From positions 1 through 27,354 of the forward strand of contig NW_021833332.1 of the NCBI RefSeq assembly GCF_006345805.1: 27,354 nucleotides of DNA. The letters run 5' to 3'. Made by a program: the position numbers and the translations under genes. The stretch's first letter is position 1. Every line of letters begins with the position of its first letter. The notes under the pieces are model-generated. The model was not told where the DNA came from. It made no database searches and was given only the letters and a program-made list of their open reading frames with translations. Of this stretch, positions 364-22,920 are shown piece by piece. Origin of the DNA: Octopus sinensis. Lineage: Eukaryota.

Positions 364-761
364 TCTTTATATATAAAAGTGAAGTTGTGTGTCTGTCTCC
401 TACGATTTAGATTCTTAACTACTCCCACATTTTGCGGTGCAGTTTAACCAAAACCGGGTATCTTATAGTCGTGATTCATATCGAGCCCTTCTTGGTATTA
501 GCGCGCGTCTACGATGAGTCTACGATTTTAAAAATAATTTACCATCATTTTTTTCCATTTTAAGGCATTTTTCGCTATTATATAAGGGAAGTAACTCTCT
601 AAAAATGTCTACGATGAGTCAACGATTTTTAAAAAAATTTACCATCATTTTTTTTCCATTTTTAATGCATCTTTTTGCTATTTTTTTGGCTATAACTCTC
701 TAAAAATGCTTATATAGTTATATCCCTTACAAACCCGAGCAACGCCGGGCGATACTGCTAG
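364..761 (+). mobile_element. Non-autonomous Helitron (complete, 398 bp) with an internal ~100-bp tandem duplication
   Basis: 5' end A|TCTTTATATATAAAAG...GTGTGTCTGTC (a363|t364). 3' end has hairpin CCCG-AGCAACGC-CGGG (734-749), then CTAG (758-761), then T. This is insertion at A|T with no TSD, the canonical Helitron termini. Internal repeat unit GTCTACGATGAGTC... starts at 507 and 607. Confidence 0.8.
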
Positions 762-923: not shown

Positions 924-1026
924 ACGATCGCAAGCCGAATATGTTAACCACTAAGCCACGCACGTTCACGCACACACATGCATATATATTTATGTATACA
1001 TATATATATATATATACACATACATA

Positions 1027-1190
1027 GGCGCAGGAGTGGCTGTGTGGTAAGTAGCTTGTTTACCAACCACATGGTTCCGGGTTCAGTCCCACTGCGTGGC
1101 ACCTTGGGCAAGTGTCTTCTACTATAGCCTCGGGCCGACCAATTGCCTTGTGAGTGGATTTGGTAGACGGAAACTGAAAGAAGCCTGTCG

Positions 1191-1237
<47 letters not shown>

Positions 1238-1462
1238 ATGTTTGTGTGTCTGTGCATGTCCCCCACCCAACATCGCTTGACAACCGATGCTGGTGTGTTT
1301 GCCTCCCCGTAACTTAGCGGTTCGTAACTTACCGACCGATAGAATAAGTACTGGGCTTACAAAGAATAAGTCCTGGGGTCGAGTTGCTCGACTAAAGGCG
1401 GTGCTCCAGCATGGCCACAGTCAAATGACTGAAACAAGTAAAAGAGTAAAAGAGAAAAAGAG
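1027..1462 (+). mobile_element. tRNA-derived SINE, family 1 (CORE-like segment, internal TA/TG microsatellite), copy 1
   Basis: Box A TGGCTGTGTGG (1037-1047), box B GGTTCAGTCCC (1080-1090), CORE-like CCTTGGGCAAGTG, tail GACTGAAACAAGTAAAAGAG. Near-identical copies occur elsewhere in the window. Confidence 0.9.
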
Positions 1463-1814
1463 ATACATACATACACGCACATACATATATATATAAATGT
1501 GTGTGTGTTCAATCATTGTTCTACGCAGAGCACAAATATTTAAAACATCACATTAATACATCCTAACGTGTGTGTTCACAACATATACACGTACACATAC
1601 ACATACACACACATCGACGTACTTGTGCATATTGCAATCTATACTCATATACAATTAGTCATAAAATTATACTTCATTAAACAAACATCACACATAATGC
1701 AACCCGGACACCGCTTGTATGAATCTCATAAAGACTGGTTATGTAACTCGTCATGTGCACATCATTTCACACTCAAATATTATAGGCTTATATGTGAATA
1801 TTACTTTATGTACG

Positions 1815-1846
<32 letters not shown>

Positions 1847-1976
1847 TATATATTCAACAATATAAGGAATGGCCCTAATAGGCCAATCGACTCACTAGAA
1901 AGAGCAGCCAAACTCAAACCGCTAAATAGTTGTAATTCTGAAACTGAAAGAGAAATAAAAACATTTACTCTTTTCA

Positions 1977-2071
1977 TCTCTGGACTATGCATAGTTTCGA
2001 CAAACTTTGGTAAACAAATTAATTAAATTAAATTAAATTTATTTACAACTGGCGTGTCTCGTCAGCAGAGA
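1977..2071 (-). ncRNA. Type I hammerhead ribozyme (complete catalytic core, GUC cleavage triplet)
   Basis: Minus strand: helix I UCUCUG (2071-2066); core CUGACGA (2065-2059); helix II GACA...UGUC (2058-2055/2002-1999); GAAA (1998-1995); palindromic helix III ACUAUGCAUAGU (1995-1984); C17 (1983); helix I CAGAGA (1982-1977). All conserved core nucleotides are present. Confidence 0.85.
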
Positions 2072-2651
2072 AGCCGAGGACGAGCAAATGTCCACGAGGC
2101 GACAGCAAAGAAGCCTCCAGTCCATATGCCCTAAATTTTCAAAATATATTAATATATTATATATATATAATACATATATACACGAATGTATATATGCCTG
2201 TATATATGTGAGTATATATGAACGTATTTCTCTTTAAATGTATTTGTCTCTCTCTTTCTCACTCTCTCTTTCCCTTTCTCTCTTTCTGTGTTTGTGCATG
2301 CGTGTATATATGTATGTATATACATATGAGCAGGACCACACCAGTCAACCTGAAACTGACACATATGTAATATATTGATCTACACATGTGTAATAAATAT
2401 ATAGGAGCTTTGATTTGTATATATATATATAAATATATATTTATGTAAATATGTGTATGTATATATTGTTAGTTTCCTTGTATATATACGTTAACACACA
2501 TAATACACACATGTTTACATGCACATGTGTACATATATGTACGTACATATATTGATAAATATATATACACATATATATATATATATGCATGTATATATAT
2601 ATATATATACATATATCAATATATGTATGTATATATATATATATATATATA

Positions 2652-2912
2652 CTCTCTCTTTACTCTTTTACTTGTTTCAGTCAAATGACTGCGGCCATGC
2701 TGGAGCACCGCCTTTAAATCGAGTAACTCGACCCCGGGACTTATTCTTTTGTAAACCCAGTACTTATTCTATCGGTCTCTTTTGCCGAACCGCTAAGTAA
2801 CGGGGACATAAGCACACCAGCATCGGTTGTCAAGCAAAACTAGGGGGACAAACACAGACACACAAACACACACATGCATATATATATATGTAATATATAT
2901 ATATAGATAATA

Positions 2913-2951
<39 letters not shown>

Positions 2952-3118
2952 TATATACGAATGACTTCTTTCAGTTTCCGTCTATCAAATCCACTCACAA
3001 GGTTTTGGTCGGCCCGAGGCTCTAGTAGAAGACACTTGCCCAAGGTGACACGCAGTGGGACTGAACCCGGAACCATGTGGTTGGTAAACAAGCTACTTAC
3101 CACACAGCCATTCCTGCG
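2652..3118 (-). mobile_element. tRNA-derived SINE, family 1, copy 2
   Basis: Reverse complement of the 1027-1462 element over its full length. Confidence 0.9.
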
Positions 3119-3139
3119 TATATACATACATACATATAG

Positions 3140-3350
3140 TCAAATCAAAGAACAAAGTGTTAAACAAAAAACAGAAAAAGAAGTAAAAACGACCGTGACG
3201 ACGTACACAAGTAATATATTTATTTATCGCTCGGTGAAAGGATAAAGTTATTAACGTTTCGAGCGTAGCTTTTCATCAGAAAGAGAAAGGTCAAAGAGAA
3301 AGAAGGAAACATAAAGAAGAATCGCCGACAATCCATGTGCGGTTACATAT
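3140..3350 (-). mobile_element. Penelope-like pseudo-LTR remnant containing a decayed minimal hammerhead motif (3252-3281)
   Basis: Minus strand TTTCTGATGAAAAGCTACGCTCGAAACGTTAA in a pyrimidine-rich context. The CUGAUGA-A-stem-GAAACGU architecture is typical of Penelope-like element pLTRs. Confidence 0.55.
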
Positions 3351-3445
3351 ATGTATATAGAGGTAGTTTGGTATGTGTATATATTGCTAAATGTATATGT
3401 AATTCTTTTTTTAAAGGATATTTTTCTTTTTTTTTCTTCTTTTTT

Positions 3446-3805
3446 TCTTTTTACTTGTTTCAGTCATTTTGACTGCGGCCATGCTGGAGCACCGCCTTTA
3501 ATCGAGCAACTTGTCCCTGGGACTTATTCTTTGTAAGCCCAGTACTTATTCTATCGGTATCTTTTGCCGAATCACTAAGTGACAGGGACATAAACACAGA
3601 CACACAAACATACACGCACAGACATATATATACACATATATACGACGGGATTCTTTCAGTTTCCGTCTACCAAATCCACTCACAAGGCTTTGGTCGGCCC
3701 GATGCTATAGTAGAAGACACTTTCCCAAGATGCCACGCAGTGGGACTGAACCCGGAACCATGTGGTTGGTAAACAAGCTACTTACCACACAGCCACTCCT
3801 GCGCC
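3446..3805 (-). mobile_element. tRNA-derived SINE, family 1, copy 3 (about 35 bp deleted internally)
   Basis: Matches copies 1 and 2 but lacks the CCAGCATCGGTTGTCAAGC segment between two GGACA(T)AAACAC-like motifs. Confidence 0.9.
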
Positions 3806-4056
3806 TATGTATCTTTTAATTTATTTCAATTAAATATTACTTTTTTACCACTAATTACTTACTCTGGGTAGTCAGGTCGTTTTGCTTCTACATAAGCTAT
3901 TTGTGATTTAAGGTTTTCTTCGAGTTTTAATATGATTTTAAACCGCAATTGTAATTTCATACAACCGGTATATTGAAAAGTCCGTTAGTTGAAAGGACCA
4001 ATGAAACAAAACCATTTTCAAATGTGTATCTATGAAACTAATTGTATATTTATGTA

Positions 4057-4437: not shown

Positions 4438-4599
4438 ATATTTATGTAACCTTATTTTGTTCCATTCTAAACAAAACTGTCCGACGAACGGTAAAGTGAA
4501 ACTCTGAGTAACAGTTTTTGGTGCTTTTTAATAATATATGTATATATGGATGATAAATGAGTGATAAGAATCCTACTTCCCAGCCACATGATGCCTTGC

Positions 4600-4859
4600 T
4601 CAATCCTAGACTGCGCAGCATGTTGGGAAAGTTAATTCTCGTGTAGCCTCGGGCCGACCAAAGCCTTGTGAGTGTATGTGTATTCGGTAGACGGAAACTG
4701 AAAGGTTTACTTTTATATCTTCGTAATTTAGCGATTCGACCAGAGGGGGTAATAGAATAACTATCAAACTTTCAAAACGCAAGCACTGGGGTCGATTCCA
4801 AGGCGGACTGTCCCAGAAGGGCCGCGGTTTAATGACTAAAACAAGTAGAAGAATAAAAT
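4600..4859 (+). mobile_element. Degraded family-1-related SINE
   Basis: TAGCCTCGGGCCGACCAAAGCCTTGTGAGTG...GGTAGACGGAAACTGAAAG and tail ATGACTAAAACAAGTAGAAG, both shared with family 1. Confidence 0.7.
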
Positions 4860-5097
4860 AATGTGTGTTTGTGTGTGCATGTACGTGCGTGTGTTCACTT
4901 ATGTATATAAATGAATAACATTTGTATATCAATATATAAATTTGTATATCAATATATTATACACTGCACAAGCATCAATGTTCTGCAAGCGATAGTATTT
5001 ACACACAAGCAGTTTCATGCCTGCATTTCACACTTGCATGAAGCATTAATTTGTCATATGCAGAAACTATTAATTGATAGGAAATAAAATATGCACA

Positions 5098-5513
5098 GGC
5101 GCAGGAGTGGCTGTGTGGTAAGTAGCTTGCTAACCAACCACATAGTTCCGGGTTCAGTACCACTGCGTGGCATCTTGGACAAGTGTCTTCTGCTATAGCC
5201 CCTAGCCGACCAATGCCTTGTGAGTGGATCTGGTAGACGGAAACTGAAAGAAGCCTGTCGTATATATGTATATATGTATATATATGTGTGTGTGTGTGTT
5301 TGTGTGTCTGTGTTTGTTCCCCTAGCATTGCTTGACAACCGATGCGGGAGTGTTTACGTCCCCGTCACATAGCGGTTCGGCAAAAGATACCGATAGAATA
5401 AGTACTGCGCTTACAAAGAATAAGTCCCGGGGTCGAGTTGCACGACTAAAGGCGGTGCTCCAGCATGGCCGCAGTCAAATGACTGAAACAAGTAAAAGAG
5501 TAAAGAGTAAGAG
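5098..5513 (+). mobile_element. tRNA-derived SINE, family 1, copy 4
   Basis: Full-length match to 1027-1462, including the A and B boxes and the tail. Confidence 0.9.
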
Positions 5514-6084
5514 GTCATATATATGGACACAACACACACTCACTTTCACACTTATGAACACACACACCAATACACACACATGCATATGTATATATAGTGA
5601 GAGATTATATAATTATATATATATATATATATATATATTTGTATTTATGTCTGTGTATGTGTGTGTTTATGTATATATAATTGAAGAAGTTGGGAGTCAA
5701 CAAGAAGGGGTATAGTTGGACATTTATTTTTTGAACCACTACAATTGTTTCTGCACAACGTAGTTCTCCAGGTGTGCAAGTACTTGATTATGCAAATGTT
5801 TTCCAGCATTATGATATCTAGTTCTGTATCCTCATGTGATATGTAAATATTGTCTCCGTAAGTTTTAAATCCTCGGCTTCAAGAGCATCCTATCTGTCTG
5901 TCTTGGCCTGAATTTAAGCCACCATATTCAAGACAGATAGATAGACAGAGAGACATATAGAGAGCGAGAGGGGAAGACAGAGAGGTAATATATGTATGTG
6001 TGTGTCTATATATTCTATACGTACGTATACTTACATAACTACATACATACGACATTCATATATATGTCTTTGAATAACGCATCA

Positions 6085-7127
6085 TATTTCTTCGGCAACG
6101 TATTATAACCACTAAGTGTCGAAGTGCATCCTTTGGCCAAGTTTGCATGTATGAGACTGATAAAATTATAACAATTGGAAGGCAGCTCTTTGAACAACAC
6201 TCTTGGTCTGATAACCTAGAATACATGCCCAAAGAAGTCGCACGACTCTACCGCAACGTATCATCAGATGGACGGATGAGACTATATGAGCACAAAACTA
6301 TGCATGGACATATTAGTAGAAAGCTCCGAGATGATAGTAACCTCGATCATCAAAGCAGTTTATCATGGACCAATAGCCGGATTACTACCTCCTAGATTGA
6401 AGGGTATGCGTTTGCAATCCAGGAACAGGAAATATCAACTAAGTACCTGATGCACAAAAAGGATAGAAATGCAAGAAATGCCGTAAAATGTGACAACCGA
6501 TGCAGACTTTGTGGTATTCATACTGAATATATCACCCACATCATAAGTTGTCCGAAATTGTCATCATGGTATTATCTACCCATAAGGCGTGATGTTGTAG
6601 CTAGGACACTCTATAATGTAATCTGTCAGAGGACAAAGAAATAAGAACCCACAATATGGTTGATACCATAGCTACTTATAATAAAAAGGAATACTGGTGG
6701 GATGTACCAGTAAATACCTCAATAAAATGTAAGCACAAAAGACCTCATATAATGATTTGGGACAGAGAAGAGAAACTGTGCACAGTTACGGAAATTATCT
6801 GCCCAGCGGATGTTAACATAAAACCAGTGACAAACAGAATACCTATGCTGAACTAGTGCGAAATCTGCTTTTTCTCTAACCAGTTCAGGTTTATATCTGT
6901 AATTATGTGGGTCCTGGGATATATAACACATTGCCCAAATATCAATCTTGAGAAATTAAGCTTCTCAAACCCAGAAAGGGGAGAGCTAATTCGAAGATTA
7001 CAGATGCAGTATATCACTGGAACTGTAAAAATCTGTAAAACTTTCCAGAAGTTTATCATTTTAAATAGTATATCACTGGAACTGTAAAAATCTGTAAAAC
7101 TTTCCAGAAGTTTATCATTTTAAATAG
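6085..7127 (+). pseudogene. 3' fragment of an R4/Dong-clade non-LTR retrotransposon ORF (zinc knuckle plus restriction-like endonuclease)
   Basis: Fragmented frames read EGYAFAIQEQEISTKY, CRLCGIHTEYITHIISCPKL..YYLPIRRDVVA, WWDVPVNT..KHKRPHIMIWDREEKLC..EIICPADVNI and QYITGTVKICKTF. These are the CCHC and PD..D RLE motifs of R4/Dong; stops and frameshifts are present. Confidence 0.8.
7008..7127 (+). repeat. Perfect 59-bp tandem duplication at the end of the R4/Dong ORF
   Basis: AGTATATCACTGGAACTG...CATTTTAAAT starts at 7008 and again at 7067. Confidence 0.95.
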
Positions 7128-12694: not shown

Positions 12695-13145
12695 ATTGTT
12701 TATTTATTATTATTATTATTATCTTTGCACAGTTTCTAACGCTGGAGATGTACTACGGTGTCAGTTGTTCACTACCAGTAAACTAAGGTAACACCTCTTA
12801 TTTTTCGAGCACCTTCCGGAGTATTCGCATGGTTTGAAGCAATGCTGTTTTCAGCAAGTACTCCACCAATATTGCAGCCCCTATTTGTTCCATGTACTTC
12901 TCAAGAATTTTATTCACTATTCCCATGGCTCCGACAATTATTGGCATTACTACCACCTTTTTCATCGACCACAACTGCTTAACCTCCCAAGCTAACCCGT
13001 TATATCTCTCAACTTTTCTTTCTTCCTTATCGCATAACTTGATGTCAGCTGGGCATGCTATATCTATGATCCAGCATAGTTTGCTTTCTCTCTCAATTAA
13101 AAATATGTCTGGCTTCCTATTCTCTATCTCATGGCTGCACTGAAT
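12695..13145 (-). pseudogene. 3' end of an R4/Dong-clade element: RLE endonuclease, 3' UTR and (TAA)n tail
   Basis: QCSHEIENRKPDIFLIERESKLCWIIDIACPAD...KVERY..LAWEVKQLW..KVVVMPIIVGAMG (PD..D, K..KY RLE motifs), stop at 12798, then a short UTR and TAA repeats near 12695-12722. Confidence 0.85.
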
Positions 13146-13224
13146 CTTAGGACAAGATTGGAAATAAGATCTTAAAGCAGCCAAATTAAATACAGGCTGC
13201 ACGGAGAAAATGCCACTGTGAAAT

Positions 13225-17831: not shown

Positions 17832-20800
17832 TCACACGGTTCCTTGCACGCACAACACTCGTGCAACATACTTCCATCTCTTTTGGAACGTACACTCTGA
17901 CAGACACCTCTTCTCCAGCCACAGTTTCCTTTTCAAATGAAAAGAAAAAAAGGATCGTAAATGTCACCAGAGATAAAGTTGCCTGTCTTAATTCCTTTTA
18001 TCCTAGTATTCCATACAGCCTCTTTTGCTATTGCTACAACCGTGAGAAAACAATTCTTACCTTCGTTCGTTAGAACTCCCGTGGGTCAATTTTTATAATT
18101 GACTCAGTCGACAGCCGTACTCTTCCTTCGCCGGACAACAGATGTTCAGCATAAGCCCACATTTCAGTTATCTCCGGACACTGAACAATAGCGTGAGGGA
18201 CGGTTTCCCTGTCCCCACCGCATCTTGGACAGGTCGGCGACTGACGTTTACCATGTCTTGCGAGCTTATCCCAAACGGGCAAGGCACCTCTGTAGCATTG
18301 CCAGGTTAAGGACTTTTGGAAGTTGTCCAACGTTCTCAACCCGAATGTACGATGAAACAAGCTGTCCAGTTGAATAAATCCGAGACCTAGAGTCGACCCC
18401 AGGCCATCGTCGCATTCAGACTCTACCAACCCACTATATAAAATCCGTGTGGAACCCCCCCGCTGGCGTTGCCCGAGCGCCGGAACAGCAAGAGGGCCTT
18501 ACGGCACTCTTTATGCCACTCACTCGACCTCGGTCTACGAGAACACCAGGCTTCCTGTTCGCAAAAACTCTTGAACTCAGGGAACATTTGTCTGGCCAGC
18601 GGAGACCACACCCGTTCACTATCCAGGAGAATCCAGAGGTGCCTCAACCTCAACGCATGTCTGCGCATCATTAACCAAGGCATCCCTAAACCTCCATTTA
18701 AAGGCTTTTGACAGCAGACAGAGCGTTTCACAAGTGGCGACCTGCCCTTCCACAAAAAGCGAAAGAGCTGTCTCTCCTCAACCTGATCAACCACGAATCC
18801 GGACAGGGCACGACAGTCAGGCGGTAGGTAATGACCGATGCGATAAACATTGGCCACTTCCGCCCTCCCTTTCAGGGATAGCCACCGCCAAGACCAAGTC
18901 TTGACTACTGCAGCCACCCTGCTCAATACCTCCGTCCAGTTCTTCTCTATCTGGAGGCCTGGTCCAAACCAGACTCCCAGCAACTTAACCGGTCCCTCCG
19001 TCCAGCGCCTAACAACACTGTCTGAAGGCATCGACTTGCCAACCCAGGTGCCGAGCTGCAAGCCGACCGACTTTTCCCGGTTAATCTTTGCTCCTGCTAC
19101 CTCCTCGTAAGCCTCAATAGTCTTACCTACTTCACGTAGGCGTACCACTGTGGTTACACTGATAGTGATATCATCCGCGAAAGCCGTAACAAACTCCTCT
19201 AGTCCTGGTTCTCTCGGGATGCCACTCAACCTTTGCAGTAATGGCTCGAGAGCCATCACATACAAAAGTGGTGAAAGCGGACATCCTTGACGAACCGAGC
19301 GTCTGATGCAGAACGGCTTCGAAAGGAAACCGTTCACCCGAACTATCGAGTCAATGTTGTGGTACAAAGCGATAAACCACCTGAGGAAGCCAAGGCCCAG
19401 GCCAAACCGCGCAAGTACAGTCGCTAGGTATCGATGGTCAACCCTATCAAAAGCTTTAGACTGGTCCAAATGCACCAATGCCCCCCCTTTGCCAGATTTA
19501 TTACCAAACCTCTCTATGGTATAGCGAATAAGATGGAGGGTATCCTGAATGGTTCTGCCTGGGATGGCACATGTCTGTGCCTCCCCGACTATACCATTCG
19601 CGACACGCGCCAACCTTTTTGCTAGAACCTTGGCCAAAATCTTCACTTCTGCGTTTAACAGAGTGATGGGCCTGAAATTCTCTAGAACGTCCCCCTTGTC
19701 CGGGTCCTTTCTGACCAACGTCACTACTCCCCGGCGCACAGATCTGGGGATAAACCCATTCTGTTTCCAGTTCGCGTACACGTCGGTCAGTAGTTGCCCG
19801 AACAAGTCTGGCATACATTTATACAGCTCGTACGGAAGACCATCAAGTCCCGTTGACTTACCCGCTTTACAATCGGCCAAAGCCTCCATCACCTCCTCAA
19901 GTGTGATTGGCCCTTCGCAAGACTCCGCATCCGACCCCGAGAGGCACGGCAGCCCGGTAAGAAAGTCCTCGAGGGCTCCCCACCACCAGGACCGCCGTCA
20001 CCCCCGAACAGCTGGGCGAAGTACTCCCGAAAGACCTCACACATTTTCTCGGGTTCGTTTATCAAGACACCCTTTGATTCGTCAAAGACCGAATAGAGGA
20101 ACTATTTCCTTGCCGAGCTTCCACCACTCGGGCCCATCCAGCGGCTTTGATTCCTTCACTTCCCATTGCACGTAACTTAGCTCTGGTAATACTTCCCATG
20201 TGGTGGGCTTCAAGATGCTGGTTTAACTCCTCGCTTGGTCTGTATTACCAGTCCTCCAGGCTTCTTCTAGTTCCTTAACTAGACCATCTCCTATTTTACG
20301 TCCCTTCTTAGCTAAACTTATGCTAAACCTAATAGACTCATATTTGATGGCTCTTTTTAGGGCGTACCACCATTTGTTATTAATGATGGTACCTGTTAAT
20401 GCCCTCTGTATTAACATCTTGATCCGCTTTCTGTACTCCTCAATCGCCAAAAGGGACGTATTGAGTTTCCAGTAGCCAGATCCCTGTCTATGCAACTTAT
20501 CTACCGTCAGTTTACAGGTAACCATCTTGTGGTCACTGTAGCTGACTAGAAAAAACTGTGGACACTCAACTATGGACTTATCTTTTTCTCTAATTAAAAT
20601 CCTATCTAGATATGTTCTGGTAGACCCGTCACTATTTGACCACGTCCACTGTGGAGTGTTCGGGTGCTCCAACCTATATGGATCTGCTAGCTGAAATTGA
20701 CTTAGCAGATCCCGAAAGCCTGTGTTACATTTTCTGTTCATGTTCGAGTTTGAGCCAACACAATCTGTGTGTGCTGCACATATTGTATTAGAGTCTCCTA

Positions 20801-21209
20801 ACACTACTAGTGAATGCGACGTGGCTAGGAACTTTCCTAGGCCACGAAAATATTCAGTTTGCGGGCCAATAATGTTTGGTGCATAAATAGCGACCAGCCT
20901 GATTGTCTTGCCACAACTGAATGTCAAGTCGAGAACGACCAGCCTGCCTTCTGGGTCAGAAAAAACCAACTTTTTCTCGGCTACCCGGTTTCTTTTTAGT
21001 AGGACCAACACCCCACCTCCCGCCCGACTCGGAGAAACGTATTTCTCGTAGCCGTTCAGGAGGGGGAGCAGATCTCTTGGCCCCTTCACCCGGGTTTCCG
21101 TTGCAACAATTACATCCAAATTTCTCGACCTGATGTCATTCAGAAAGCGTCCTTGCTTCCAGCTTGACAACAGGCCATGAACATTTAAACAACCAATGTG
21201 AATAGCCAT
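17832..21209 (-). CDS. ORF2: APE endonuclease, reverse transcriptase and C-terminal zinc knuckle (frameshifted)
   Basis: APE motifs LNVHG, ETR, IYAP, LGDSN, RTYLDR, SDH (20223-21209). RT motifs GLDGLPYELY, FRPITLLN, LDQSKAFDRV, RQGCPLSPLLY, FADD, KLLGV (18423-19892). CPRC..ETVPHAIVQC (18070-18429). Tail ...AIAKEAVWNTR...HLKRKLWLEKRCL..FQKRW to TGA at 17832. About 8 single-base frameshifts. Confidence 0.9.
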
Positions 21210-21220
21210 CACTTACCTGT

Positions 21221-22750
21221 TTAATTAGGATTGTCCGGTGGAGGGGGACCCTCCACCTTTTTTTATCCAGGGTCGGAGGTGGACGGTCTTGGGAAATAGA
21301 TTTGTCAAAATCCCGTCTCACCACCGACACAGAATTATCAGGTGGAGGGGGAATCTCCACCTTTTCCTTTTCTCGCGGGATCGGAGCTGGTAATCCATGA
21401 AATATCGACTTGTTAAAATCTAATCTCAATGAAGATACAGTCTTTCTGTACTTATTTTGTAGAATTCTATAAGTCTTATTTGAGACTTCATATATGTCGT
21501 AATTGATAAATTCCTCTGAAAGGTTATCAATTTTTTTTACAGTCTTTATGAGTTGAATGTCTCTCATGAGCTCAGTATCTTTAGTGTATACGGCTATTAT
21601 GCCTTTTTCTTCTTTTTCTCTTCTGGCAGTCTTTTTTGGTCGTTGTTCTGTAGTAGTCGCCGCTCTCGGCTGGGTTGCTGGTTGTATTTTTCTTTTGTTT
21701 GTTGTTTTTTTCTCATCTGTTTCTTCTTTATCTTCTTCCTCTTTGTCTTTTTTCTCCTCTTCCTCCTCTTCTTCATTTTCCTTGCAGTTCCTTCGAATGT
21801 GGCCTAATTGACCACATAAAAAACATCGAGGTTTTCGGCCCTCAACAAACACCACGAGGTTCTCCTCCCCTACCTCAATTGTCTCAGGAATTGTTTGAAT
21901 TATTTTAGGGTCCGCTTGAATGAGAAGATTAATTGTTTTACCATCCCAGCGTGGGTTTTCCGTAGCGGTAGCCTGGAGGAGAGTAATTTTTTCTACCTCT
22001 TTGATTAGGACTGCCGCCAACAACCACATAGGTTCGACCTCTGGCGGGACCCTTGTAATTTTTATTCGCGACGTCCTCATCCCCATATAATAGGGTATTA
22101 ACTCCACGTCGTTCGTTTTCAACGTTTCCACTGAGTTCTTGTGTGCTATTTCTTTATTGGTGAACCTTACTTCCACCGTTCCGAATTTTTTTCCTCTTCT
22201 CAGAAATACTACGTCGCCCAATATTGGCTTTAAGCACTTTTCTATTTTCTCTTCTGACATTCTTTCAATTTTTCTATTTTGTAGACAATATGTTTTGAAA
22301 ATTATTGTTTTTTGCTTTTCTTCCTGTAATAACTTTTGCGGAGGTTCAATTTTCACACTGTTGTCATTTATTTCCATCATTTTGCTGTATTTCATAATTT
22401 CGCTTTATTATCGTCGACAGTATCTGGGTTCCACCCCCAGCAGCCAACGCAAAACTTTTTTTTCCATTTTTTGGTTCTATCTGGATGCTAGGCACATCAA
22501 TTATTCTCTTCGACACAATGCCTTTGTTCTCTGGCAAAGTCGGAAACTCTTCTGGTGAAAGTTCTGACGAGCTCTCAGACACATCTCCAAAAATATCAAA
22601 TATATTATCCTCTCTGCTATTCCTTCTTGTAGCGGGGGAAACCCCTATTTCCTTGTCTGTAGTTGGCTCCTCGCCGGACATGTATTTCCTCCTCTCAACA
22701 GGAGAAACAAGTATTTCTGCTCCAACGGTAGGCTCCATGCTAGACGACAT
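21221..22750 (-). CDS. ORF1: gag-like nucleic-acid-binding protein (RRM-like region, single CCHC; two frameshifts)
   Basis: ATG at 22750 (MSSSMEP...KKSFALAA) joins by frameshift to the 419-aa ORF containing CFLCGQLGHIRRNC. The restored C-terminus KKVEGPPPPDNPN* ends at TAA 21221, just before the ORF2 ATG at 21209. Confidence 0.85.
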
Positions 22751-22920
22751 TCTTCCCCCCAAAGGGGGAATGAACAACGCGTGCTACCACAAGCACTAAG
22801 TGTTTTCAATTGAAAACTCCAACAGTTAAGTTATTCAACAGTTTAACAAGAAACAACAGTTGTTAACAATATTAACACCACGAAACAGCAATTCTTACTT
22901 CACGAACACATGTGCGGCAG

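What the first reader, a model, noticed from the sequence alone, without database searches (positions are those of the whole stretch)
1977..2071. Complete solo type I hammerhead ribozyme with palindromic helix III and a microsatellite-expanded helix II
Seen in the sequence (minus strand): UCUCUG-CUGACGA-GACA[51 nt]UGUC-GAAA-CUAUGCAUAG-UC|CAGAGA. Every invariant core base, the G10.1-C11.1 pair, a GUC triplet and a 6-bp helix I are present, predicting cleavage between 1983 and 1982. Helix III is a perfect 12-nt palindrome that can fold as a 4-bp stem with a UGCA loop or as a dimer. The helix II insert forms a further ~11-bp AU stem (GUAAAUAAAUU/AAUUUGUUUAC) capped by (UAAUU)n repeats. Established: type I hammerheads with palindromic helix III mark Penelope-like elements and metazoan retrozyme circRNAs, usually as tandem copies or minimal variants. 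This one is a single copy with a non-minimal, intact core and is not explained by any other feature. Inference: it is a potentially active ribozyme of an unclassified cephalopod retrozyme or pLTR family.
Basis: partly seen in the sequence, partly recalled or inferred. Interest (0 to 1): 0.85.

Follow-up and report, generated by a model that had tools for sequence, protein, structure and literature searches.

The report
Lone hammerhead ribozyme motif, cephalopod DNA
A single, complete copy of the classical animal (type I) hammerhead self-cutting RNA motif sits on the minus strand of this cephalopod DNA, most likely a stray copy of a small ribozyme-carrying mobile element; this kind of element is already well known in animals, so the find is real but ordinary.

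Summary
Minus strand 2071→1977 carries every invariant hammerhead base, a 6-bp helix I, a 4-bp helix II with G10.1-C11.1, a 12-nt palindromic helix III and a GUC site. Predicted cleavage is between 1983 and 1982. The helix II insert is 52 nt, not 51. It is not chance: about 1e-4 expected per window, and about 0.02 per genome once the canonical extras are counted. Rfam Hammerhead_1 aligns over its full length but scores only 15 bits (threshold 34), because loops 2 and 3 are oversized. The architecture matches the classical type I hammerheads of invertebrate retrozymes (coral, mussel), not the minimal Penelope-element variants. A 12-bp stem (2093-2082 / 1970-1959) closes helix I. The motif lies in a unique, structured unit of about 268 bp and 40% GC, bounded by (TA)n. 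There is no second copy, no tandem array and no Penelope ORF in the window. The host is a cephalopod, and cephalopod genomes already carry hundreds of Rfam hammerhead hits. Copy number, covariation and activity could not be tested: the genome tools were shut and every other homologue search came back empty. Verdict: a new member of a known kind, of low to moderate interest.

The parts
2066..2071 (-). Helix I, 5' strand (UCUCUG)
   Evidence: Pairs with 1977-1982 in 6 Watson-Crick bp
2059..2065 (-). Core box CUGACGA (C3-A9)
   Evidence: Read directly; matches the Rfam RF00163 consensus CUGAcGA
2055..2058 (-). Helix II, 5' strand (GACA), including G10.1
   Evidence: Pairs with 1999-2002
2003..2054 (-). 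52-nt extension of helix II.
   Evidence: Fold of 1999-2058(-): -11.7 kcal/mol, z = -3.67, 0 of 200 shuffles as good. TRF finds a period-5 repeat at 2016-2039.
1999..2002 (-). Helix II, 3' strand (UGUC), including C11.1
1996..1998 (-). Core G12 A13 A14
1984..1995 (-). Helix III: the 12-nt palindrome ACUAUGCAUAGU (A15.1...U16.1), forming 4 bp plus a UGCA loop, or a 12-bp duplex between two molecules
1982..1983 (-). C17 (1983) and the predicted scissile bond between 1983 and 1982
   Evidence: Position within the motif; cleavage itself is inferred, not shown
1977..1982 (-). Helix I, 3' strand (CAGAGA)
2072..2093 (-). 5' side of the distal helix I: GCU bulge, 3 bp (2077-2075), an internal loop and a 12-nt closing-stem strand (2093-2082)
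   Evidence: MFE fold of 2095->1957. A 12-bp helix has P = 0.003 in flank shuffles and 0.029 in a genomic control.
1959..1976 (-). 3' side of the distal helix I: 3 bp (1976-1974), AAA, and a 12-nt closing-stem strand (1970-1959)
1866..2133 (-). Unique unit of about 268 bp that carries the hammerhead, 39.6% GC (boundaries approximate)
   Evidence: No other copy in the window. Linear fold -77.3 kcal/mol, z = -3.06. Circularly permuted fold -73.1 kcal/mol, 62% paired, z = -3.3. GC.
1815..1853 (.). (TA)n microsatellite at the 3' border of the unit
   Evidence: TRF
2144..2180 (.). Imperfect (AT)n microsatellite at the 5' border of the unit
   Evidence: TRF
2100..2115 (-). Degenerate 16-nt duplicate (GGCUUCUUUGCUGUCG) of helix I 5' strand plus the start of the core box, 40 nt upstream; the core box is not intact
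   Evidence: 14 of 16 identical to 2060-2075

Best explanation
This is a genuine classical type I hammerhead ribozyme motif of the kind carried by metazoan non-LTR retrozymes. It is present here as one dispersed, unit-length copy of about 268 bp on the minus strand of a cephalopod genome, sitting between two TA-rich microsatellites. If the minus strand is transcribed, helices I (6 bp, extended through a bulge and internal loop to a 12-bp closing stem), II and III would assemble the intact core. The RNA would then cut itself between C1983 and C1982, leaving a 2',3'-cyclic phosphate and a 5'-OH. Two features depart from the textbook form. The normal 4-6-nt loop 2 is replaced by a 52-nt AU-rich hairpin tipped with a pentanucleotide microsatellite. 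Helix III is a longer palindrome (4 bp plus tetraloop). With only one ribozyme, this locus can cut a transcript once but cannot release a unit-length RNA for circularisation. It is therefore most likely a dead-end or decaying offspring copy rather than a source element. What is shown: the sequence, the architecture, the non-random nature of the motif, its uniqueness in the window and the cephalopod host. What is inferred: descent from a retrozyme-type element, insertion into a (TA)n tract, and cleavage.
For: The motif is complete and all helix pairs are Watson-Crick. The chance expectation is about 1e-4 per window and about 0.02 per genome with the canonical extras (plus my calculation). Rfam Hammerhead_1 aligns end to end, losing score only at loops 2 and 3. 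The 6-bp/4-bp/palindromic-helix-III architecture is that described for canonical metazoan hammerheads (PMC4209133), and I read the same layout in the experimentally cleaving coral Amil224 and mussel Mg353 retrozyme constructs. The unit's size (268 bp), GC (39.6%) and strong predicted structure (z about -3) fall in the published retrozyme range of about 150-400 bp and below 50% GC (PMC7229834, PMC7761336). A 12-bp closing stem extends helix I (P = 0.003 to 0.03). Dispersed monomer copies of retrozymes and solo hammerheads are documented (bioRxiv 10.64898/2026.07.22.740005; PMC4209133). Cephalopod genomes carry Hammerhead_1 loci and Penelope elements (PMC6962438). The host is a cephalopod.
Against: No homologous copy could be retrieved, so there is no evidence of a family, of conservation or of covariation. 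The Rfam score is far below threshold. In the full unit the minimum-energy fold uses local hairpins that sequester CAGAGA and part of the core; the hammerhead fold is 5.7 kcal/mol worse. Replacing loop 2 may abolish the loop 1-loop 2 contact needed at physiological Mg2+. (TA)n tracts are so frequent in this window that flanking by them is weak evidence for targeted insertion. There is no tandem arrangement, which is the defining genomic signature of retrozymes.
Confidence: 0.6

Rival explanations
1. It is a living member of a so far undescribed cephalopod retrozyme family in which the long AU-rich helix II is a family trait rather than private decay. This copy would be an efficient ribozyme, and tandem or source copies would exist elsewhere in the genome.
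For: The core is intact and the helices are perfect. The helix II extension is itself a well-formed hairpin (z = -3.67). A significant closing stem is present. The unit is structured. The internal loop after 4 bp of helix II could stand in for loop 2 (inference).
Against: Only one copy is visible and no relatives were recovered. The tip of the extension is a pentanucleotide microsatellite, typical of neutral expansion. Competing folds are predicted.
Confidence: 0.2
2. It is the terminal (pLTR) fragment of a 5'-truncated Penelope-like element that inserted into a (TA)n microsatellite.
For: PLEs carry type I hammerheads in their pLTRs, and most such motifs occur as single elements from truncated copies (PMC4209133). 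PLEs show an insertion bias for microsatellites, including (TA)n (PMC8557442). The unit is bounded by TA repeats. Penelope elements occur in cephalopods (PMC6962438).
Against: Metazoan PLE hammerheads are minimal variants: no or 1-bp helix III, helix II of 6-8 bp, helix I of 4-5 bp, and an extra base before 10.1. This motif has none of those traits. No RT or GIY-YIG remnant was found among the ORFs tested around it. (TA)n is very common in this window.
Confidence: 0.1
3. It is a chance match in AT-rich, repeat-rich DNA with no ribozyme ancestry.
For: With loop 2 allowed up to 70 nt and G-U pairs allowed, about 9 matches of this helix quality occur per 4.1 Gb of random sequence, so a few per cephalopod genome. 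The Rfam score is below threshold. No homologues were found.
Against: All 14 helix pairs are Watson-Crick (0 such hits in 4.1 Gb). The motif also has G10.1-C11.1, C15.2-G16.2, C17, the canonical 6-bp/4-bp helix lengths, a palindromic helix III and a 12-bp closing stem. The joint expectation is about 0.02 per genome or less.
Confidence: 0.05
4. It is a host-domesticated solo hammerhead that processes a host transcript (intron, UTR or lncRNA), as proposed for the conserved intronic hammerheads of amniotes.
For: It is a solo copy with an intact core embedded in a closed, structured 139-nt domain.
Against: No exon or gene was recognised near it. The surroundings are SINE-like repeats and microsatellites. 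There are no conservation data.
Confidence: 0.05

Closest known systems
Classical type I hammerheads of metazoan non-LTR retrozymes (coral Amil224, mussel Mg353; Cervera and de la Pena 2020, PMC7229834)
   Same: Type I topology; a CUGANGA / GAAA / GUC core; helix I of 6 bp; helix II of 4 bp with G10.1-C11.1; a fully palindromic helix III; a carrier unit of a few hundred bp with GC below 50% and strong predicted structure.
   Different: Here there is one copy rather than a head-to-tail array. Loop 2 is 52 nt instead of 4-5 nt. The helix III palindrome is longer (12 nt against 8-10 nt). There is no sequence similarity outside the motif. circRNA production is unknown.
[quoted passage not shown]
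   Same: Type I; a palindromic 15.2-16.2 / loop 3; G10.1-C11.1; mostly found as dispersed single motifs; the host elements favour microsatellite targets.
   Different: PLE motifs lack helix III or have a 1-bp helix III, have a 6-8-bp helix II, a 4-5-bp helix I and an extra base between positions 9 and 10.1, and they work only as dimers. This motif is canonical, and no PLE ORF lies nearby.
Rfam RF00163 Hammerhead_1 (235 loci annotated in the giant squid genome, PMC6962438)
   Same: Aligns over all 45 model positions with the core and the stem-closing pairs matching the consensus.
   Different: It scores 15.0 bits against a gathering score of 34, because of a 54-nt insertion against 8 nt at loop 2 and 6 nt against 2 nt at loop 3. 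A standard Rfam annotation would therefore miss it.
Satellite and SINE hammerheads of newts, axolotl and Schistosoma (Sm-alpha)
   Same: Type I hammerhead in a repeat unit of about 330 bp; a palindromic helix III that allows an active dimer (general knowledge).
   Different: The amphibian helix III is 1-2 bp and needs dimers, whereas here a 4-bp helix III could act alone. No pol III boxes or tRNA-like part were found (inspection). The copy number here is unknown.

Membership tests
Hammerhead ribozyme, type I | Invariant core: C3 U4 G5 A6 N7 G8 A9, G12 A13 A14, A15.1-U16.1, H17 | tested here: met
   2065-2059 CUGACGA; 1998-1996 GAA; A1995-U1984; C1983
Hammerhead ribozyme, type I | Three helices around the core, with helix I carrying the 5' and 3' ends | tested here: met
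   Helix I 6 bp, helix II 4 bp, helix III 4 bp, all Watson-Crick. The MFE fold of the 139-nt domain keeps helices I and II.
Hammerhead ribozyme, type I | Reaches the curated Rfam RF00163 gathering score (an operational criterion, not a biological one) | tested here: not met
   15.0 bits against 34, E = 0.39, seen only with lax filters; no hit. The loss comes from the oversized loops 2 and 3.
Hammerhead ribozyme, type I | Loop 1-loop 2 tertiary contact | tested here: inconclusive
   A GCU bulge follows 6 bp of helix I, as in canonical motifs. Loop 2 is replaced by an internal loop plus a 52-nt hairpin, and the contact nucleotides cannot be assigned.
Hammerhead ribozyme, type I | Site-specific self-cleavage 3' of H17 | not testable with these tools
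   Needs an in vitro transcription and cleavage assay
Metazoan non-LTR retrozyme | Classical type I hammerhead (6-bp helix I, 4-bp helix II, palindromic helix III) | tested here: met
   compared with PMC4209133 and the constructs
Metazoan non-LTR retrozyme | Head-to-tail tandem repeats of about 150-400 bp, each with a hammerhead | tested here: not met
   One motif and one unit in 27 kb. Only a 16-nt partial duplicate lies upstream. Solo monomer derivatives are nevertheless described.
Metazoan non-LTR retrozyme | Unit size of about 150-400 bp, GC below 50%, highly self-paired RNA | tested here: met
   268 bp, 39.6% GC; z = -3.06 linear and -3.3 circular, 62% paired
Metazoan non-LTR retrozyme | Multi-copy family in the genome with conserved, covarying ribozyme | not tested
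   The genome search and the fetch from genomes were shut. The substitute searches were empty.
Metazoan non-LTR retrozyme | Expression as linear and circular RNA | not testable with these tools
   No transcriptome data are available
Penelope-like element pLTR hammerhead | Lies in a direct terminal repeat flanking an RT + GIY-YIG ORF | tested here: not met
   No such ORF among the ORFs tested in the first 8 kb or elsewhere. The only RT is a LINE (APE + RVT_1 + zf-RVT) 16 kb away.
Penelope-like element pLTR hammerhead | Minimal architecture: absent or 1-bp helix III, long helix II, short helix I, extra base before 10.1 | tested here: not met
   Helix III 4 bp, helix II 4 bp, helix I 6 bp, no extra base
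Penelope-like element pLTR hammerhead | Insertion into microsatellites such as (TA)n | tested here: inconclusive
   (TA)n lies on both sides, but (TA)n tracts are frequent throughout this window

The most novel reading that the evidence does not exclude
The 52-nt AU-rich helix II is not decay but a conserved trait of an active cephalopod retrozyme, or of a host-adopted solo ribozyme. In that case a classical type I hammerhead would work with loop 2 replaced by an internal loop plus a long stem, and with a 12-bp closing stem and competing hairpins acting as a conformational switch.
Probability: 0.12. Interest if true: 0.5.

Novelty: new member of a known kind. Interest (0 to 1): 0.27.

Why it matters
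If confirmed, this adds a cephalopod example to the widespread family of animal hammerhead-bearing retroelements. It also shows that copies with expanded loops escape standard Rfam annotation, so published hammerhead counts in cephalopod genomes would be underestimates. It does not open a new question. The biology of type I hammerheads in retrozymes and Penelope-like elements is established, and a solo copy is the expected by-product. Only if the long helix II turned out to be conserved and compatible with fast cleavage would it bear on how far the loop-loop contact of natural hammerheads can be remodelled.

Tried and rejected
2. An exact 18-mer scan of GTDB genome contigs gave 5 unrelated bacterial hits.
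3. An exact 16-mer (GAAACTATGCATAGTC) scan of metagenome contigs gave 107 loci and of viral contigs 15 loci. None is a hammerhead.
4. A phmmer search of the 59-aa stop-to-stop ORF across the motif against 1.84 billion representatives gave one spurious hit, a low-complexity tandem-repeat translation.
5. I sampled DNA around relatives of the window's LINE RT. No hammerhead and no match to the unit was found in about 1 Mb of fetched loci. I dropped this route because the expected density is about one motif per 10 Mb.
6. I looked for a PLE protein seed in paper supplements; none was held. The PLE-flank route was therefore abandoned.
7. BLAST of the unit against the mussel and coral retrozymes showed no similarity beyond the motif.
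8. The loose hammerhead-like string at 3236-3279(-) fails helices I, II and III and was rejected.
9. No tRNA-like or pol III SINE head was found.
10. I considered the 16-nt upstream duplicate as the relic of a second hammerhead, but its core box is broken (CUGUCGC) and no GAAA box follows it.
11. The two remaining large protein searches were not spent on the other short ORFs, because the chance of success was very low.

Full report
**What is there**

Read on the minus strand, 2071→1977 is UCUCUG CUGACGA GACA [52 nt] UGUC GAA ACUAUGCAUAGU C|CAGAGA. A hammerhead descriptor I wrote finds exactly this site in the 27-kb window and nothing else, even with helix minima relaxed to 3/2/2 bp. The descriptor requires a CUGANGA box, a GAAA box, A15.1-U16.1, H17, three helices, loop 2 up to 70 nt and loop 3 up to 12 nt.

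- All invariant bases are present.
- G10.1-C11.1 (2058-1999) and C15.2-G16.2 are present.
- The only factual slip is the insert length: it is 52 nt (2054-2003), not 51.
- ACUAUGCAUAGU is a perfect palindrome. As a hairpin it gives -1.2 kcal/mol; two copies cofold at -19.1 kcal/mol.
It scores -11.7 kcal/mol, z = -3.67.
- Its tip is a period-5 microsatellite (TRF, 2016-2039).

**Is it more than chance?**

I scanned 4.14 Gb of random sequence with the window's base composition. Nine sites had helices at least 6/4/4 bp when G-U pairs were allowed, and none had Watson-Crick pairs only.

- That is about 1.2e-4 expected per window, and roughly ten per cephalopod-sized genome under the permissive rule.
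- The real site is all Watson-Crick and also has G10.1-C11.1, C15.2-G16.2 and C17. From base frequencies these together carry a chance factor of about 2e-3 (my calculation).
- The joint expectation is therefore about 0.02 per genome.

The motif also has the exact helix lengths described for canonical metazoan type I hammerheads: helix I of 6 bp, helix II of 4 bp and a palindromic helix III (PMC4209133). I conclude it is not a chance match.

**Rfam**

At gathering thresholds the window has no hit. A permissive scan of 1850-2200 also missed it. When only 1965-2085 was given, so that the filters were laxer, RF00163 Hammerhead_1 aligned over all 45 model positions at 1978-2070(-). The core and stem-closing pairs matched the consensus, but the score was only 15.0 bits (gathering 34), E = 0.39. 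The RAGATH-1 hammerhead model gave 15.5 bits. The printed alignment shows insertions of 54 nt against 8 nt in loop 2 and 6 nt against 2 nt in loop 3, and I attribute the loss of score to these two loops. Routine Rfam annotation would therefore not report this locus.

- **Distal helix I.** Helix I continues. After the 6 bp there is a GCU bulge on the 5' strand, then 3 bp (2077-2075 / 1976-1974), an internal loop, and a 12-bp stem (2093-2082 / 1970-1959).
  - A helix that long between the two 40-nt flanks occurs in 0.3% of flank shuffles, and in 2.9% of equally spaced genomic segment pairs from this microsatellite-rich window.
  - The 139-nt domain 2095→1957 has an MFE of -34.9 kcal/mol, z = -3.16, with hammerhead topology. 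The exception is that three core bases pair instead of helix III, a 2.1 kcal/mol difference.
- **Partial duplicate.** A 16-nt stretch (2100-2115, 14/16 identical) repeats the helix I 5' strand and the start of the core box 40 nt upstream. Its core box is broken.
- **Carrier unit.** The hammerhead lies in a stretch of about 268 bp (1866-2133, 39.6% GC) with no other copy in the window.
  - It is bounded by (TA)n at 1815-1853 and imperfect (AT)n at 2144-2180.
  - As RNA it is unusually structured: z = -3.06 linear and z = -3.3 as a circle permuted at the cleavage site, 62% paired.
- **Competing folds.** In the whole unit the MFE structure uses local hairpins. CUCGUC pairs with the core GACGAG, and a downstream hairpin takes CAGAGA. 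The best hammerhead-compatible fold is 5.7 kcal/mol worse. Activity in the native context is therefore uncertain.

**Context and host**

- The window is eukaryotic, repeat-rich DNA.
- Five copies of a SINE-like repeat lie within 1-5.7 kb.
- Microsatellites are dense.
- A broken LINE lies at 18.07-22.8 kb on the minus strand, with ORF1 carrying zf-CCHC, then APE, RVT_1 and zf-RVT.
- No RT or GIY-YIG (Penelope-type) ORF lies near the hammerhead.

**Comparison with known systems**

The experimentally cleaving retrozyme constructs in the supplement of PMC7229834 read as follows.

| Construct | Sequence around the ribozyme |
|---|---|
| Coral Amil224 | ACUGCA CUGAUGA GGCC-AGAAA-GGCC GAA ACAGUACUGU C\|UGCAGU |
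| Mussel Mg353 | GCGUCA CUGAUGA GUCU-UUUGU-AGAC GAA ACGCGCGU C\|UGGCGU |

Both have a 6-bp helix I, a 4-bp helix II and a fully palindromic helix III. That is the layout found here; only loop 2 (5 nt against 52 nt) and the palindrome length differ. Invertebrate retrozyme hammerheads self-cleave efficiently as single motifs (PMC7229834, PMC7761336).

Metazoan Penelope-element hammerheads are different. They are minimal variants with no or 1-bp helix III, a long helix II, a short helix I and an extra base before 10.1, and they act as dimers.

The motif therefore works like, and looks like, a retrozyme-type hammerhead. The defining genomic feature of retrozymes, a head-to-tail array, is absent in this window. 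Dispersed monomer derivatives are described, and solo hammerheads are common.

A unit-length copy with the ribozyme intact in its interior is what reverse transcription of one turn of a circular template would give. This is inference. The TA-repeat borders fit the microsatellite bias reported for PLE endonucleases, but (TA)n is too common here to weigh much.

**What could not be done**

The decisive tests are copy number, tandem organisation and covariation among homologues in the source genome. The substitutes all failed:

- exact-word scans of genome, metagenome and viral contigs;
- a protein-space search with the ORF spanning the motif;
- sampling of DNA around related LINE genes.

There is no sequence similarity to the mussel or coral retrozymes outside the motif.

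**Verdict**

Type I hammerheads are already known in cephalopod genomes (235 Rfam loci in the giant squid) and across invertebrates. This is therefore a new member of a known kind, notable mainly for its microsatellite-expanded helix II, which hides it from Rfam.

- Interest: about 0.27.
- Probability that it descends from a hammerhead-bearing mobile element: about 0.9.
- Probability that it is specifically a dead-end retrozyme-type monomer as described: about 0.6.

Noticed in passing
window 1007-1500(+), 2481-3138(-), 3434-3833(-), 4534-4704 (partial), 5070-5679(+): Five copies (71-91% identical) of a SINE-like repeat of about 450-650 bp, with internal (TA)n and (TG)n tracts, crowd the first 5.7 kb. 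The hammerhead unit sits between two of them but is not part of the family. ARAGORN finds no tRNA-like head.
   Followed up: partly
window 18070-22777, minus strand: A degenerate LINE of about 4.7 kb. ORF1 carries a CCHC knuckle (21136-22395), followed by an APE endonuclease (20223-21212), RVT_1 (18423-19892) and zf-RVT (18070-18429), split into separate ORFs. Local GC is 52%. The best relative is 59% identical, an Argonauta hians protein.
   Followed up: partly
window 6396-6853(+) and 12798-13202(-): Two ORF fragments share a C-terminal motif (…EIICPADVNI… / …IDIACPADIKL…). One has a weak zf-RVT hit (E = 0.012). They are probably 3' ends of another non-LTR retrotransposon family.
   Followed up: no
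window 507-708: A 100-bp unit repeated twice in tandem (85% match) in AT-rich DNA.
   Followed up: no
window 2100-2115 vs 2060-2075, minus strand: A 16-nt direct repeat (14/16 identical) duplicates the helix I 5' strand and CUGACG of the hammerhead 40 nt upstream, as UCUUUG CUGUCG. It could form a decoy helix I with CAGAGA. Its origin is unexplained.
   Followed up: partly
window 3236-3279, minus strand: The string CUGAUGA…GAAAC matches a loose hammerhead pattern, but helices I, II and III do not form. It is a chance match; the loose pattern is expected about 4 times per window.
   Followed up: yes
L006 (JGI metagenome 3300045642, contig Ga0486131_03187): An environmental metagenome contig encodes a LINE RT 58% identical to the window's, as close as the Argonauta protein. 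Cephalopod-like DNA is therefore present in that sample.
   Followed up: no
P0121 (protein library): The only 'homologue' of the ORF across the hammerhead is a 1167-aa translation of a tandem repeat of about 93 aa. It is a gene-calling artefact and a spurious low-complexity match.
   Followed up: yes
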